Of a stretch of 64,000 bases of DNA, positions 207-19,033 are shown one piece after another. The translations under genes were made by a program, and so were the position numbers. This stretch comes from Octopus bimaculoides (lineage: Eukaryota). Under the pieces are notes generated by a model, which did not search any database, was not told the DNA's origin, and saw nothing but the letters and a program-made list of their open reading frames with translations. Position 1 is the first letter of the stretch; each line of letters starts with the position of its first letter. The DNA lies in the NCBI RefSeq assembly GCF_001194135.2, contig NC_068995.1, forward strand, positions 39,361,098-39,425,097. Reading direction: 5' to 3'.

Positions 207-427
207 CGTTATGCATCGTGCTAAGTAACCATGTTGACATTCCGGTTGTATTTTGATCTTTGCAACGTGTTATGGCACGTGATCGGAATCCTAAATATCA
301 ATGTTGACAACCGAAGGAAGTAACATTTCGTGGCAATGAATGATAGATATTGAATGAATGTATGAATGAATGAATGAATGAATGAATGAATGAAGGAAGG
401 AAGGAAGGAAGGAAGGAAGGAAGGAAG

Positions 428-461
<34 letters not shown>

Positions 462-519
462 AAAGGAAGGAAGGAAAGAGGGAAGGATGGATGGATGGAT
501 GGATGGATGGAAAGAAATA

Positions 520-551
<32 letters not shown>

Positions 552-837
552 CGGAACCAAAGAAAATTCAGAGGAAAGTAGCGGAAGGAAGAAAGAATGA
601 AGAAAGGGAAGGAAGGAAGGAAGGAAGGAAGGAAGGAAAGAAGGAAGGAAGGAAATAGAAAGAAAGAAAGAAAGAAAGAAAAAATGAAAGAAAGAAAAAG
701 AAAGAAAGAAAGAAAAAAAGAAAGACGAACCGAAGAAAAATCAGAGGAAATTAGCGGAAGGAAGAAAGAATGAAGAAAGGGAAGGAAGGAAGGAAGGAAG
801 GAATGAAGGAAGGTAGGAAAGAAGGAAGGAAGGAAAT

Positions 838-868
<31 letters not shown>

Positions 869-940
869 CAGAAGGAAAGAAAGAAAGAAGGAAAGAAAGA
901 AAGAAGGAAAGAAAGAAAGAAGGAAAGAAAGAAAGAAATA
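1..940. repeat. Polypurine microsatellites (GAA/GGA)n, (GAAT)n, (GGAA)n, (GAAA)n
   Basis: Directly visible at 1-205 and ~345-938; the ORFs here are artefacts. Confidence 0.95.
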
Positions 941-2959
941 TCTTTTTGAAAACTACATGATTAGGCACAGACTGTGGTTAAGGAATTCCCTTTCCAACCA
1001 CATGGTTCCCGGCTTCAGCCGCTACTGTCCCCCGGCACCTTGGACAAAGGAAGAAGACCTTCAACTAGCTCCCGAACCTTGTTTTATTTACCTCGAAAGG
1101 AGAGAAGGCATCTTGACCTCGTCGTGGTTTAAACTTATACAGAAAGCCGAAACGAATAACACAAGTCCATTATACATGACATTCTAGTGACTGGACAAAT
1201 TTGTTAATTTTAAACTAAGTACTAGTGTTTTAATACAGTTCGATATAATCGACTTTATCGAGTTCATTCACTGAAACCGTGTGCTCTTTTGCCTAAAATC
1301 AAGTTTTATTTTATATTTTTAATTATTTGTTTTTAAATTAGAAAAAAATGAATTACATCGTCACACAGGTATACAAATATTCCCTTTATTTAAATCATCA
1401 TGGTGGAGTAAAATGGCAAGTTCTAATTTCTGAAATCTTGACATGTATTTTATTTGATCTTGTTTTCTTGCCAACTGATTCTAGCAGAGCATACTGAAAT
1501 GGTTATATTTGGATTGGACTGATCTGGCTAATTTCAGAACATTTTCAGGTAGTATACAAAGCTATTTTATCTGTTGATTTCACTCCCAGCATGTAAACTC
1601 GCCGTATATTGTGACCCCGTTTTCTATGATTGTCAGAGAACATTTGAACGTTTACAGAGGTTCTTAATACGACCAATGATGCCGGACCTCACCCTTATGT
1701 ACAAAAGCATGGCCAGAGATGTAACCGGGGTGTCTGCTATGATGCTTGCAGCCTAAAAACGAGGATATGGAATGGGTCTATGATTAAGAGATGATAAGTG
1801 ATGCATTGTATTATGTTTACCAGCTGAGGATAAAGCATACAGGTGAGGCCATTTGAACAGATAGGCAGTAGTTATAACACATGTGAACATCCCTAATGGG
1901 TTAGCAAGTGAGGTAGCTTTGAATGCATGTCCATACACGATCATGTTCGTCTGTTTGTGGTAGGCAGGGTGATGTATCAGGTCAAACCAACTAAATGACA
2001 GGCGGATAGAATCCTAATACTGGCAAAGATATAATTCAATACTCGCCAACTAAAGCAAACTCTGCTGGGCTAGTTTAGTCACCGAGGAGAGAGAGAAGTG
2101 AAGCCATATCCTGGGGAGGAAAATAAGTGCAACTAAGATTTCCGAGCCCAATCAAACTATCGCAGAGAATTTACACCAACATTGAAATGTATTGCGAACT
2201 AATTTTATAGCGAATATAAAGACCCCAGAAACAGAAAGGTTGTAAAGATCGGTAACTATTTAATCCACAGCAATGACAAAAAGGCTGTGGAAACAAACTT
2301 AATTTGAAATTAAGATAGTACTTAATGTCCAACATAAGATATATAGACACAAAGTTTAATATATCATAGGACTTACAACACACGCTACGAACAGTAGCAT
2401 AGATATTTACGCATTGACATGTGTTTCTTCGCATTACGAATTACAGCCGTAAATAGTCAAACTTAATGTATGCTTTTGTTATTGTTTTTTTTTGTTTATC
2501 TTTTCTACGTCAAACTGTAATTCTCAAGATATGTTCGGATTTAGAATATCTCTGTAACAGTAGAGCTGATGGTTTGACACATAACGGATAGTCTTTAAGG
2601 AAGTTTCTGTCCTGAAGTTGCAATTTGAATGACAAGTCAATATAAGACGCGGGGGATTAAAGTCTATAAAAGAAAGCGTGTAAAAACGGTAATGGAAGCT
2701 AAATACATATGTATACATACACACATGTCCATACATATACACAGATACAGACATATATATAAAATGAAGTCCCGAATACTAAGTATGAAAAAAAATGTTA
2801 AAGAAGGAACGAGAAGACGGAAGAAAGTAGTAGAGGGATATTAAAATAGACAGGAAAAAATGTAAAAAGGGAAATTAATTAAGATTCGAACTCTAAATGC
2901 ATAATGGATGAAGTGAATGAATTAAAGCAAGCAAAGTAAAACACTGTATACTTACAGCA

Positions 2960-3151: not shown

Positions 3152-3424
3152 CTTACGTATAATTAAGTATTACAAACAGTTTTTATTTTTTTTATTTTTT
3201 TTTAGAAATTCTAGTAGAATTTTGGAACATATAGTAAAATTCAAAACAAATCTTTTTCTTTTACCCCTGACAACGATGTAGATATTCAAATGTTCCTTTT
3301 CCAACTTTTTTTCTTAAAGTAATCTTGGAACAAAATATTTTTAACATGAAGTCTGTAAAATGTCACCATTCACAGTGAATAACAACAATATTAATAAGTG
3401 TAGCAATAAGTGTCAAATGATTAC

Positions 3425-3535
3425 CTGATATAGCAAATCCACTGAAGCCAACTGCTAATGTGAGACATACAATTGCAGTGACTCTGTCAGCAGTGTAGCC
3501 AACACCTAATAGGAATACGGCTTCCATTCCGAAAC
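3425..3535 (-). CDS. VGLUT: VGLUT internal coding exon: (G)[36 protein letters not shown](G)
   Basis: Manual translation (absent from ORF track); acceptor ttgcAG at 3537-3536, donor GTAATC at 3424; 111 nt, phase 1 to 1; joins the previous exon to give NCGGFGMEA. Confidence 0.96.
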
Positions 3536-3668
3536 CTGCAACGTGTAAAAAGTAATGAAGTTAGAAAAACAAGTCTCTCATATAATTAAACGCAAAACCT
3601 AAAATAGTTTAATCTGTTTAGCATCATATTATTGCAGTGTATCCTTATAGGACATTTATACACACCTA

Positions 3669-3718
<50 letters not shown>

Positions 3719-3799
3719 TGCATACACACACATACACACACACATATCAACTTTAATAATAATAAGGACTATTACGAAGTGGCATATCATTATATTTAA

Positions 3800-4465
3800 T
3801 TCTTTTTATATATACTGCTTCACATAGACCTACACGTTTCAACTGCACTAGTGAGTAACCGTTGTAATTGGAGCCCTACTATAATACTGGTGCAGTTTCT
3901 TCAGGGCTTTCACTTTAATATCCTTCGATTCAATTGTTTAAAGTATTTCGTTCTTCTACTCTGCGTTGAATGATGTTGAGTTGTTTCATGAAGTTAGACG
4001 CGAACTATCTTCAATTCAAGTTTTGTTTGGATAATGACTTATACTTCGTCATTTCAAAACATGCTGTTGTTTTAATGTGTATTATTAATTTATACTGGGC
4101 AAATGTGAATTTCTTCATGCGCAAGCATATCAAAGCTTGCTCCTGTCTAGAATTTATCAAATTACATTTAGATGCAAAAATTTGGGAAAATTCTTCTAAA
4201 TATAGATCACATTTTTTAGTTCCAGGTCTGTATGGTTTTGCAGTAGAAATTAATTCCCAATTGATAGTATAGTCTTTCATTTTTGTCTCTAAATGAACTC
4301 ATATGATTTGTCAGTCTCTTCTTGAAAATTAGTGATGTCGCACCGATGTAAAAGTAGCCATTACCCTCAGATGTAACATTACATCTATATATTACATTCT
4401 TAGTCTAACACTTAATTTACACATAACAGCATTCCTGTTTAGAATAATTGCAAAGATAATTTTTT
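3800..4465 (-). mobile_element. Penelope-like retroelement 3' remnant (GIY-YIG endonuclease, Naiad-like) with terminal hammerhead motif
   Basis: Minus-strand translation with stops and a deletion: CNYSKQECC..KC*TKNVIYRCNV..GYFYIGATSLIFKKRLTNHMSSF..DYTINWELISTAKPYRPGTKKCDLYLEE..LINSRQE..CLRMKKF. VIY/YIG and Cys motifs fit PLE GIY-YIG; clade assignment is from recall. Confidence 0.8.
3826..3909 (-). ncRNA. Type I hammerhead ribozyme motif
   Basis: CUGAAGA (3904-3898), 8-bp stem II AACUGCAC/GUGCAGUU, GAAA (3840-3837), quasi-palindromic ACGUGU stem III, GUA triplet, imperfect stem I AAGCC/GGUCU. Activity unknown. Confidence 0.7.
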
Positions 4466-4565
4466 ATATTTCTCTCAAATTTAGATTTAATATGAACGTT
4501 CATGGTAAAATCAAATTCTTTTACACCAAGTTCTTTATTACTATTCATACACACACACACACACA

Positions 4566-4627
<62 letters not shown>

Positions 4628-18573: not shown

Positions 18574-18900
18574 TATGTCTATAGTTAAGAAAAAGATGAA
18601 AACAACTACGCTCTGCCAAAATCTAGTAACAGTCATCCACCCACCCCCCACATTTTCTGGGTATGTATGTGCCACAGATGCGATAACGTCGGAAGAGACG
18701 AGATCAGGATTCTGCTTTGTGCGCTAACTCATCGAAAGGGAAGATTATCATCAATGAGTGACTAGTAAGATACGCACGAATTTACATCTACATTTCTCTG
18801 TGAATACGTGTAAATATTATACTCAGGTACCATTTAGACAATTTATTTTGCGAAAAGCAATTAAAGATATATTTAAAAAGTGGTAAAACAATATACAAAC

Positions 18901-19033
18901 CTCCGCAGTTAAATATTTTCCTTACATTTGTGGTTGATAAGTAGCCATTTCGCCTCAAAAAATCGGCCAACTGACCACCAAATGGTACAATAATAGCCAT
19001 AACAAGATGAGGAAGAGCAGATATGATGCCACT
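18901..19033 (-). CDS. VGLUT: VGLUT internal coding exon: [44 protein letters not shown](G)
   Basis: Within ORF 18788-19060; acceptor ttctttcAG at 19035-19034, donor GTTTGT at 18900; 133 nt, phase 0 to 1; [20 protein letters not shown] motif. Confidence 0.97.

What the first reader, a model, noticed from the sequence alone, without database searches (positions are those of the whole stretch)
3826..3909. Hammerhead ribozyme motif on the sense strand of the VGLUT pre-mRNA, ~290 nt before a 3' splice site
Seen: on the minus strand, AAGCC-CUGAAGA-AACUGCAC[41 nt]GUGCAGUU-GAAAC-GU-GUA^GGUCU. The catalytic core is complete, stem II is a perfect 8 bp with an R-Y closing pair, and stem III is the quasi-palindrome ACGUGU. 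It lies directly 3' of a Penelope-like GIY-YIG remnant. Established: Penelope-like elements carry minimal type I hammerheads with palindromic stem III thought to act as dimers. Inference: cleavage between 3831 and 3830 would cut the 15.4-kb intron just upstream of the FGMEA exon and could affect splicing or RNA turnover of a neurotransmitter transporter. GGGCU in loop II (3876-3872) can pair with AGCCC (3908-3904), as a tertiary contact or an inhibitory fold. Caveat: stem I has a mismatch and a wobble, so it may be inactive.
Basis: partly seen in the sequence, partly recalled or inferred. Interest (0 to 1): 0.7.

Follow-up and report, generated by a model that had tools for sequence, protein, structure and literature searches.

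The report
Relic retrotransposon hammerhead motif in intron
The hammerhead ribozyme motif is really there, but it is the leftover 3' end of a dead, 5'-truncated Penelope-like retrotransposon sitting in an intron of a VGLUT-like gene, and nothing suggests that it cuts the host RNA.

Summary
On the minus strand, 3909-3826 reads AAGCC-CUGAAGA-AACUGCAC-[41 nt]-GUGCAGUU-GAAA-CGUGU-A^GGUCU. It is the only such motif in the 64 kb (expected 0.01 for stem II of at least 6 bp; 0 of 300 random sequences reached 8 bp). It lies in the sense strand of a VGLUT-like gene, 295 nt upstream of the 3' splice site of a 15.4-kb intron.

It belongs to a roughly 735-bp, 5'-truncated, decayed Penelope-like element of the 'Hydra' type (4548 to about 3815). 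The element has a GIY-YIG endonuclease remnant with two stops, a 54-nt deletion and a lost stop codon. It ends in TATATATA and lies among microsatellites. One paralogous copy (L001, 71% identical) carries the same 3' end with the hammerhead broken. A related element (L007) has a canonical hammerhead at the same position.

As a host ribozyme it is very probably inert:
- Stem III is 2 bp with a 2-nt loop.
- No second copy exists for dimer formation.
- Stem I is weak.
- A competing helix that buries C3-U4-G5 dominates the predicted ensemble.
- Its preservation fits neutral decay.

Rfam finds nothing, but it also misses the L007 control. Orthologous introns could not be obtained. This is a new member of a known kind, of low interest.

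The parts
3826..3909 (-). Minimal type I hammerhead motif, comprising stem I, the core, stem II with a 41-nt loop, and a rudimentary stem III. The predicted cleavage site lies between 3831 and 3830.
   Evidence: Direct reading. It is the sole descriptor hit in the window, with 0 of 300 simulations reaching an 8-bp stem II. It is homologous to the 3' end of the paralog L001.
3898..3904 (-). Core box CUGAAGA (C3 to A9).
   Evidence: In L001 the homologous C3 is G, a change reported to abolish cleavage (PMC11167929).
3841..3897 (-). Stem II (AACUGCAC 3897-3890 with GUGCAGUU 3848-3841, closing pair A10.1-U11.1) plus the 41-nt loop II (3889-3849).
   Evidence: The loop is also present in L001, so it is ancestral to this subfamily and not a later insertion. 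The pair probability of stem II is only 0.16 in a 91-nt context and about 0 in 271 and 561 nt.
3831..3840 (-). GAAA box and stem III, A-C-G-U-G-U, followed by A17. This gives 2 bp with a 2-nt loop. It is self-complementary with two G.U pairs.
   Evidence: The intermolecular duplex energy is only -3.9 kcal/mol.
3872..3878 (-). 3' arm (UAGGGCU, inside loop II) of the competing helix. It pairs with AGCCCUG at 3908-3902.
   Evidence: The helix is in the MFE and centroid structures. Pair probabilities are 0.74-0.84 in 91 nt and 0.89-1.0 in 271 and 561 nt. It is kept in L001 with two double changes.
3815..3825 (-). Short tail of the element after the cleavage site. The element ends at the TATATATA run (3814-3807).
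   Evidence: The alignment with L001 continues into (TA)n at the same point.
3910..4085 (-). 3' UTR of the element, between the former stop codon and the hammerhead.
   Evidence: 82% identical to L001. The former stop, TGA in L001, is TTA at 4088-4086.
4086..4548 (-). Decayed C-terminal part of the PLE ORF: linker (CxCX5C type) plus the GIY-YIG endonuclease. It carries two in-frame stops and a ~54-nt deletion at 4276/4275. The conserved Cys and His of the CxxC and CxH motifs are mutated.
   Evidence: Translation. Pfam GIY-YIG E=0.001, below the curated cutoff. 717 homologues at E<=1e-3. tblastn places family members only at 4548-4020. Alignments; deletion.
4549..4627 (-). 5' flank: compound microsatellite (TA)4(TG)n(GA)n(TG)n abutting the truncated 5' end of the element.
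3424..3535 (-). Downstream VGLUT-like exon ([37 protein letters not shown]), with its 3' splice site AG at 3537-3536.
18899..19030 (-). Upstream VGLUT-like exon (...[14 protein letters not shown]). It defines the 15.4-kb intron that holds the element.

Best explanation
The motif is the 3'-terminal hammerhead module of a dead, 5'-truncated Penelope-like retrotransposon of the 'Hydra' clade type. The copy is about 735 bp (4548 to about 3815, minus strand). It inserted in sense orientation into a TA/TG microsatellite within a 15.4-kb intron of a VGLUT-like SLC17 gene.

In a live element the hammerhead is thought to process tandem or read-through element transcripts, working as a dimer and/or with help from the element's protein. 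That role is inferred from the literature and was not shown here.

In this copy the catalytic core and stem II have survived, but the motif is very probably inert in the host pre-mRNA, for four reasons:
1. Stem III cannot form in a monomer.
2. There is no second copy on the transcript.
3. Stem I is reduced to about 3 contiguous pairs.
4. A 7-bp competing helix ties up the 5' strand of stem I and C3-U4-G5.

Shown here: the motif, its non-random nature, its homology to a repeat family, its position in the element and in the gene, and the thermodynamic preference for the competing fold. Inferred: the lack of cleavage and the lack of host function.
For: - **Motif and statistics:**
- **Element identity:** a GIY-YIG remnant with a decayed linker. 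It has 717 homologues. The long members (P0029, P0033, P0036, P0007) carry an RT-like YRDDG and a DKT motif, a CxCX5C linker, and CxxC and CxH motifs around the conserved E and N. These match the published description of the Hydra clade, which has readily detected hammerheads and inserts into (TA)n (PMC8557442).
- **Truncation:** only 4548-4020 matches family proteins, and there is no RT remnant anywhere in the window.
- **Paralog L001:** 71% identity over 691 nt including the hammerhead region. It ends in (TA)n at the same point. Its hammerhead is broken (C3 to G, three stem II pairs lost, GAAAC changed to UAAAAUAU).
- **Related copy L007:** it lies between two (TA)n runs and has a canonical type I hammerhead on the ORF strand, about 110 nt after the stop codon. 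It also has A10.1-U11.1 and a GUA cleavage triplet.
- **Inactivity:**
  - No other copy in the window.
  - Stem II probability 0.16 falling to 0, stem I at most 0.011, competing helix 0.74-1.0, and a cofold that keeps the competing helix.
  - The same method gives stem II P=0.97 for L007.
  - The literature reports no detectable monomer cleavage and low dimer cleavage (PMC4209133), and protein dependence with no RNA-seq ends at the site (PMC11167929).
- **Neutrality:**
  - Identity to L001 is 71% in the hammerhead region, against 73% in the coding part and 82% in the 3' UTR.
  - About 30% of the resolved changes fall on the window's lineage (plus a hand count of the C-terminal block).
  - That puts survival of about 30 critical positions at p of roughly 0.06-0.1.
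Against: - The core (11 of 11 positions) and the 8-bp stem II are intact although the ORF is broken. All six core and stem differences from L001 are on L001's side. This is mildly unexpected (p about 0.1) and could reflect constraint.
- Only one paralog could be retrieved, so the family consensus is unknown.
- No orthologous intron could be examined.
- Thermodynamic models ignore the non-canonical contacts of the hammerhead core and any protein chaperones.
- PLE proteins expressed from other copies could in principle assist folding.
- The Hydra-clade assignment rests on comparing motifs with a text description, not on a phylogeny.
Confidence: 0.85

Rival explanations
1. The hammerhead is active in the VGLUT pre-mRNA, either as a tolerated slow cleaver or as a domesticated regulator. 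In that case it lowers or modulates mRNA output by cutting the intron 295 nt upstream of the 3' splice site.
For: The core is complete, stem II is a perfect 8 bp, and GUA is a good cleavage triplet. The motif is in sense orientation, inside the transcript and close to a splice site. The core is intact while the paralog's is broken. Precedent exists in the conserved intronic type I hammerheads of amniote RECK, CTCL and DTNB (PMC6155905).
Against: - There is no stable stem III and no partner copy.
- Stem I is weak.
- The competing fold dominates, whereas the L007 control folds correctly.
- PLE minimal hammerheads showed no detectable monomer cleavage in vitro, and the one tested in detail was protein-dependent.
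- Slow intronic hammerheads do not block splicing.
- Preservation is within neutral expectation.
- There are no loop-loop tertiary elements of the kind seen in fast natural hammerheads.
Confidence: 0.04
2. The functional RNA element of this repeat subfamily is not the ribozyme fold but the competing hairpin (3908-3902 with 3878-3872). That hairpin could be a built-in off-switch for the hammerhead, or a 3'-UTR structure recognised by the element's reverse transcriptase. On this view the hammerhead stems were already dispensable in the master copies. This reading is compatible with the best explanation as far as the host gene is concerned.
For: The helix dominates the ensemble. In L001 it is kept in 6 of 7 pairs with two double (compensatory) changes. 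The hammerhead stems show no compensation and lose three pairs each in L001. The window's two stem I defects (A.C and G.U) are exactly the positions that co-vary in the competing helix.
Against: Only two sequences are available. The shuffle control is not significant (134 of 500). L001's own MFE uses a different fold. The related element L007 has an ordinary, well-folding hammerhead.
Confidence: 0.1
3. The motif is a chance match to the hammerhead consensus with no ribozyme ancestry.
For: Rfam reports no hammerhead family, even at E<=10 on 600 nt. The MFE fold is not a hammerhead and is no more stable than shuffles (z=+0.76).
Against: Expected frequency is at most 0.01 per window. The motif sits where the related element L007 and the published family description place a hammerhead, and it is part of a repeat shared with L001. 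Rfam also misses the clear hammerhead of L007, so its silence is uninformative.
Confidence: 0.01

Closest known systems
Minimal hammerhead ribozymes of Penelope-like elements (Cervera & De la Pena 2014, PMC4209133; Lunse, Weinberg & Breaker 2017, cited from PMC6765202)
   Same: Type I topology. Long helix II (8 bp) and short helix I (5 positions). Rudimentary self-complementary helix III, implying dimer action. No loop-loop tertiary motifs. Located 3' of the RT-EN ORF near the element's end. Occurs as an isolated motif from a truncated copy, which the paper says is the commonest situation.
   Different: [quoted passage not shown] The closing pair is A10.1-U11.1 instead of the highly conserved G10.1-C11.1. 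Loop II is very large (41 nt). Helix III is a quasi-palindrome with two G.U pairs.
'Hydra' clade of C-terminal-EN Penelope-like elements (Craig et al. 2021, PMC8557442)
   Same: The endonuclease family has a CxCX5C linker and CxxC and CxH motifs around the conserved E and N. Long homologues have DKT. Elements are short, insert into (TA)n, carry a hammerhead in the 3' region, and show inverted truncated copies (seen in L007).
   Different: The window copy has only the last ~150 codons, decayed. The published members are said to have canonical hammerheads (as L007 does), whereas this subfamily's motif is of the minimal type with a long loop II. Clade membership was judged from motifs, not from a tree.
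Conserved intronic type I hammerheads of amniotes (RECK, CTCL, DTNB; Rfam HH9 and HH10; De la Pena & Garcia-Robles 2010, via PMC6155905)
   Same: A type I hammerhead on the sense strand inside an intron of a protein-coding gene, probably of retroelement origin.
   Different: The amniote hammerheads have stable helices and loop I-loop II contacts, cleave efficiently, and are conserved across orthologues. Here helix III is missing, there are no tertiary elements, there is no Rfam HH9 or HH10 match, and conservation is untested.
Animal non-LTR retrozymes (tandem type I hammerhead repeats; PMC7229834; bioRxiv 10.64898/2026.07.22.740005)
   Same: Hammerheads related to PLE pLTRs, with dimer-dependent type I motifs.
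   Different: Retrozymes are short tandem non-coding repeats giving circular RNAs. They are reported to be depleted from introns. Here there is a single copy attached to an EN remnant, with no tandem array.

Membership tests
Hammerhead ribozyme (type I) | Conserved core: C3-U4-G5-A6-N7-G8-A9, G12-A13-A14, A15.1-U16.1, H17 | tested here: met
   CUGAAGA, then GAA-A15.1, then U16.1-A17, read directly. It is the only such site in 64 kb.
Hammerhead ribozyme (type I) | Three helices around the core, stable enough to form the junction | tested here: inconclusive
   Helix II is a perfect 8 bp. Helix I has 2 G-C pairs, 1 G.U, 1 mismatch and 1 A-U. Helix III is 2 bp with a 2-nt loop and cannot form in a monomer. 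Ensemble probability of helix I is at most 0.011, and of helix II 0.16 falling to 0.
Hammerhead ribozyme (type I) | Match to a curated covariance model (Rfam RF00163, RF00008, RF02275, RF02276, RF02277) | tested here: not met
   No hit at the gathering score, nor at E<=10 on 3600-4200. The unmistakable hammerhead of L007 is also missed at E<=10, so this test has little power for PLE-type motifs.
Hammerhead ribozyme (type I) | Site-specific self-cleavage | not testable with these tools
   Needs in vitro transcription and in vivo RNA end mapping.
PLE minimal hammerhead (Cervera & De la Pena 2014) | Helix II of 6-8 bp and helix I of 4-5 bp | tested here: met
   8 bp and 5 positions. Criteria are taken from PMC4209133.
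PLE minimal hammerhead (Cervera & De la Pena 2014) | [quoted passage not shown] | tested here: not met
   A9 is followed directly by A10.1, which pairs with U11.1.
PLE minimal hammerhead (Cervera & De la Pena 2014) | G10.1-C11.1 pair | tested here: not met
   The pair is A-U here. The related L007 hammerhead also has A-U.
PLE minimal hammerhead (Cervera & De la Pena 2014) | Palindromic 15.2-16.2 and loop 3, allowing a dimeric helix III | tested here: inconclusive
   ACGUGU self-pairs as A-U, C-G, G.U, U.G, G-C, U-A. The duplex energy is -3.9 kcal/mol. L009 has the same NNGUN'N' form.
PLE minimal hammerhead (Cervera & De la Pena 2014) | Located in the terminal repeat or 3' region of a PLE | tested here: met
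   It starts 176 nt after the former stop codon of the EN ORF and ends 11 nt before the end of the element.
PLE minimal hammerhead (Cervera & De la Pena 2014) | Second copy nearby (tandem or within 50 kb) to form the active dimer | tested here: not met
   There is no other copy of 3760-4480 and no second hammerhead descriptor hit in 64 kb.
Hydra-clade Penelope-like element (Craig et al. 2021) | C-terminal GIY-YIG EN with a CxCX5C linker and CxxC and CxH motifs flanking the conserved E and N | tested here: met
   The window remnant reads CNY-SKQEC-C ... YIGAT ... CDLY ... CLR, which is decayed. The paralogs keep CNCSKQDSC (P0031), and CDLC and CLH (L001). Pfam GIY-YIG E=0.001 is below the curated cutoff.
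Hydra-clade Penelope-like element (Craig et al. 2021) | RT domain with DKT and RWK motifs, without CxC or IFD | tested here: inconclusive
   The RT is absent from the window, which is 5'-truncated. Long homologues show ADKT, YRDDG and RLRWRAW, but Pfam RVT models do not hit them. No phylogeny was made.
Hydra-clade Penelope-like element (Craig et al. 2021) | Insertion into (TA)n and presence of a hammerhead | tested here: met
   TATATATA lies at the 3' end of the window copy, and TA/TG repeats at its 5' end. (TA)n is also present at L001, L007 and L009. L007 carries a hammerhead.
Domesticated intronic hammerhead (amniote HH9/HH10 type) | Conservation of the core and helices at the orthologous intron across species | not testable with these tools
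   No contig with the orthologous exon and intron was found. All retrieved exon ORFs differ from the window (ADTVTAITC against ADRVTAIVC) and have unrelated flanks.

The most novel reading that the evidence does not exclude
The isolated hammerhead has been kept by selection as an intronic ribozyme of a vesicular glutamate transporter gene in an invertebrate. It would be held off by the competing helix and switched on by a chaperone, a PLE protein or co-transcriptional folding. That would make it an invertebrate counterpart of the amniote RECK and CTCL intronic hammerheads.
Probability: 0.03. Interest if true: 0.6.

Novelty: new member of a known kind. Interest (0 to 1): 0.15.

Why it matters
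As it stands this is routine repeat annotation. Thousands of PLE-derived minimal hammerheads are scattered through many metazoan genomes, mostly as isolated motifs from truncated copies (PMC4209133).

Three things are useful:
- It is a documented example from the little-studied Hydra clade.
- It shows that Rfam models miss such motifs.
- It records a possible covarying 'off' helix in this subfamily's 3' end.

Only if the motif proved to be conserved and active in the VGLUT intron would it bear on the open question of what intronic hammerheads do.

Tried and rejected
- **Rfam.** Run at the gathering score on the whole window and at E<=10 on 3600-4200: no hammerhead. The only hits were (TG)n-driven mir-297 matches. 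I do not count this as evidence against the motif, because the L007 control is missed too.
- **Other copies in the window.** A self-BLAST of 3760-4480 found no other copy.
- **Protein searches.**
  - The search for homologous proteins with the remnant alone found nothing.
  - A search with a small family alignment gave 16 short-contig hits.
  - Only L001 is similar to the window at the DNA level.
  - L002-L006, L008 and L010 gave no convincing hammerhead.
- **Exact look-up.** A look-up of the 89-aa window ORF found nothing on record.
- **Orthologous intron.** The search via the exon peptide returned exon ORFs from other animals only.
- **Metagenome scans.**
  - A family alignment was too diverse to search with.
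  - A close alignment found no relatives.
  - A DNA pattern spanning the 5' half of the motif found no match.
- **Pfam.** Scans of long homologues detected no RVT domain, so the RT was identified by motifs only.
- **Literature.** The supplement of PMC8557442 with the Hydra hammerheads is not held. Lunse et al. 2017 is not held.
- **Selection on the hammerhead.** I considered this and rejected it as not demonstrated.

Full report
**Observation**

On the minus strand the window reads AAGCC (3909-3905), CUGAAGA (3904-3898), AACUGCAC (3897-3890), a 41-nt loop (3889-3849), GUGCAGUU (3848-3841), GAAA (3840-3837), CGUGU (3836-3832), A (3831) and GGUCU (3830-3826). This is a complete hammerhead core in type I order. 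Stem II is a perfect 8 bp, closed by A10.1-U11.1. Stem III is A-U and C-G around a 2-nt loop. Stem I has C-G, C-G, G.U, an A.C mismatch and A-U.

With a simple descriptor (CTGANGA, a Watson-Crick stem II, then GAAA, both strands) this is the only hit in the 64 kb. Markov-simulated windows gave 0.13 hits for stems of at least 4 bp, 0.01 for at least 6 bp, and none in 300 for 8 bp.

**Gene context**

The downstream exon ([37 protein letters not shown]) runs 3535-3424 on the minus strand, behind a ttgcag acceptor. It matches VGLUT2 and VGLUT3 structures (E=1.3e-6).

It places further exons at 45983-45930, 41468-41349, 39763-39641, 37718-37563 and 19030-18899, all on the minus strand.

The motif is therefore in the sense strand, in an intron of about 15.36 kb, with its cleavage site 295 nt upstream of the 3' splice site. 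The host species was not identified by any tool.

**What the motif belongs to**

Directly 5' of the motif on the minus strand lies a broken reading frame with GIY-YIG signatures (VIYRCNV...YIGATS..FKKRLTNH...INWELISTAKPYRPGTKKCDLY). The Pfam GIY-YIG match has E=0.001, below the curated cutoff.

An exhaustive HMMER search found 717 relatives. Most are short ORFs. The long ones (P0029, P0033, P0036, P0007) add several features:
- an RT-like region (FxQxDIxxFYPSI, GLYRDDGL, ADKT);
- a CxCX5C linker;

These are the features by which Craig et al. 2021 defined the 'Hydra' clade of PLEs with a C-terminal endonuclease. That clade comprises short elements that insert into (TA)n and in which hammerheads were 'readily detected' (PMC8557442).

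In the window, family proteins match only 4548-4020, and no RT remnant exists anywhere. The copy has the following damage:
- two in-frame stops;
- a ~54-nt deletion at 4276/4275;
- mutated Cys and His residues;
- a former stop codon turned into TTA (4088-4086).

Its 5' end abuts (TA)4(TG)n(GA)n(TG)n, and its 3' end runs into TATATATA at 3814-3807. It is thus a 5'-truncated, dead copy of about 735 bp.

**Relatives**

One paralogous copy was retrieved: L001, a 983-nt contig from a public sequencing run. It is 71% identical over 691 nt, including the whole 3' UTR and the hammerhead region, and it ends in (TA)n at the same point.

In L001 the motif is destroyed: C3 is G, three stem II pairs are lost, and GAAAC has become UAAAAUAU. 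The 41-nt loop II is shared, so it is an original part of this subfamily and not a later insertion.

A more distant family member, L007, is again a copy of roughly 800 bp lying between two (TA)n runs. It carries a textbook type I hammerhead on the ORF strand about 110 nt after the stop codon (CUGAUGA-AGG-GAAA-CCU-GAAAC-AGUC-UGUA^UACUUG, with a long helix I). It also has an inverted partial copy of the same hammerhead upstream. It shares A10.1-U11.1 and the GUA triplet with the window motif.

Rfam reports neither the window motif nor the L007 hammerhead. Its silence therefore says little.

**Is it likely to work in the host RNA?**

1. Stem III (2 bp, 2-nt loop) cannot form in a monomer. The self-duplex of the ACGUGU segment is worth only -3.9 kcal/mol. 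There is no second copy in 64 kb.

2. In ViennaRNA ensembles the hammerhead stems are minor. Stem II has probability 0.16 in 91 nt and about 0 in 271 and 561 nt, and stem I at most 0.011. A 7-bp helix between AGCCCUG (3908-3902) and UAGGGCU (3878-3872) has probability 0.74-1.0. This helix buries the 5' strand of stem I and C3-U4-G5, and it cannot nest with stem II. As a control, the same calculation gives stem II P=0.97 and the distal helix I in the MFE for L007.

3. Published tests of PLE minimal hammerheads found no detectable monomer cleavage and low dimer cleavage (PMC4209133). For an Anolis Poseidon element, cleavage occurred only with the element's protein, and no RNA-seq ends were found at the site (PMC11167929).

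4. Even an active slow hammerhead in an intron leaves splicing intact (Dye et al. 2006 and Fong et al. 2009, as summarised in PMC2995048).

**Is its preservation unusual?**

Identity to L001 is 71% in the hammerhead region, against 73% in the coding part and 82% in the 3' UTR. In the 32 core and stem positions it is 26 of 32. All six differences break the hammerhead on L001's side.

Using two other family proteins as outgroups, 3 resolved amino-acid changes fall on the window's lineage and 8 on L001's. A hand count of the C-terminal block adds 2 and 3. The window's lineage thus carries about 30% of a pairwise divergence of roughly 27-29%, or about 8-9%.

At that rate, survival of 28-32 critical positions has a probability of roughly 0.06-0.1. 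All six differences falling on L001's branch has a probability of about 0.1. Both are compatible with neutral decay of a somewhat younger copy. They do not exclude constraint.

**Side observation**

The competing helix is kept in L001 as GACGGUG/UAGCGUU, with 13 of 14 cells paired and two pairs changed on both sides. The hammerhead stems show no compensation. The window's two stem I defects are the very positions that co-vary in this helix. With two sequences this is anecdotal (shuffle control 134 of 500). It does suggest a testable idea: this subfamily's 3' end may contain a selected hairpin that competes with the ribozyme fold.

**Comparison with what is known, and verdict**

The motif works like, and is best filed with, the minimal dimer-type hammerheads of Penelope-like elements. 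It meets the criteria for helix lengths, rudimentary self-complementary helix III and location. It fails two consensus traits: the extra nucleotide after A9, and G10.1-C11.1. It also has an unusually long loop II.

It is not a demonstrated counterpart of the conserved amniote intronic hammerheads. The proposed effect on VGLUT RNA is unsupported and unlikely.

- Novelty: new member of a known kind.
- Interest: low (0.15).
- Most novel reading not excluded (a domesticated, switchable intronic ribozyme): about 3%.

Noticed in passing
window 3902-3908 with 3872-3878 (minus strand); L001 866-872 with 896-902 approx.: A 7-bp helix competes with the hammerhead fold and dominates the predicted ensemble. 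The paralog L001 keeps it, with two pairs changed on both sides (G-C to A-U, C-G to G-C). The hammerhead stems show no compensation. It may be an off-switch or an RT-recognition hairpin of this repeat subfamily.
   Followed up: partly
L007 3128-3185 (+) and about 2520-2600 (inverted): A related ~800-bp truncated Hydra-type copy lies between two (TA)n runs. It has a canonical type I hammerhead (stem II AGG/CCU with a GAAA loop, and a long helix I) and an adjacent inverted partial copy of the same hammerhead. Rfam does not report it even at E<=10.
   Followed up: partly
L009, minus strand next to (TA)n (about 810-870 in plus coordinates): A hammerhead-like motif (CUGAUGA-G-GUGGUU-CUU-GAUCAC-GAAA-GUGCUC^UAC) lies on the strand opposite to the endonuclease ORF, abutting (TA)n. 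Its stem III, AGUGCU, has the same NNGUN'N' form as the window's ACGUGU.
   Followed up: no
window 4275-4276 and 4086-4088: The endonuclease remnant has a ~54-nt deletion relative to L001, removing the '...LSK.IW.LKD..' segment. Its original stop codon (TGA in L001) is TTA.
   Followed up: yes
window 3590-3750, 4549-4627, and many other sites: The window is rich in (TG)n, (TA)n and (GA)n microsatellites and has 14 runs of N (5331 N in all), as in a draft assembly. The weak Rfam mir-297 matches at 3629-3747 are produced by (TG)n.
   Followed up: partly
proteins P0002-P0150: Most database relatives of the endonuclease are stand-alone ORFs of about 120-200 aa that begin just upstream of the CxCX5C linker. 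This suggests that 5'-truncated copies of similar length are the commonest form of this element family in many animals.
   Followed up: no
window 291-968: Long low-complexity repeats encode KEGRKE and SFFLSF-type ORFs on both strands. They are simple-sequence DNA unrelated to the finding.
   Followed up: no
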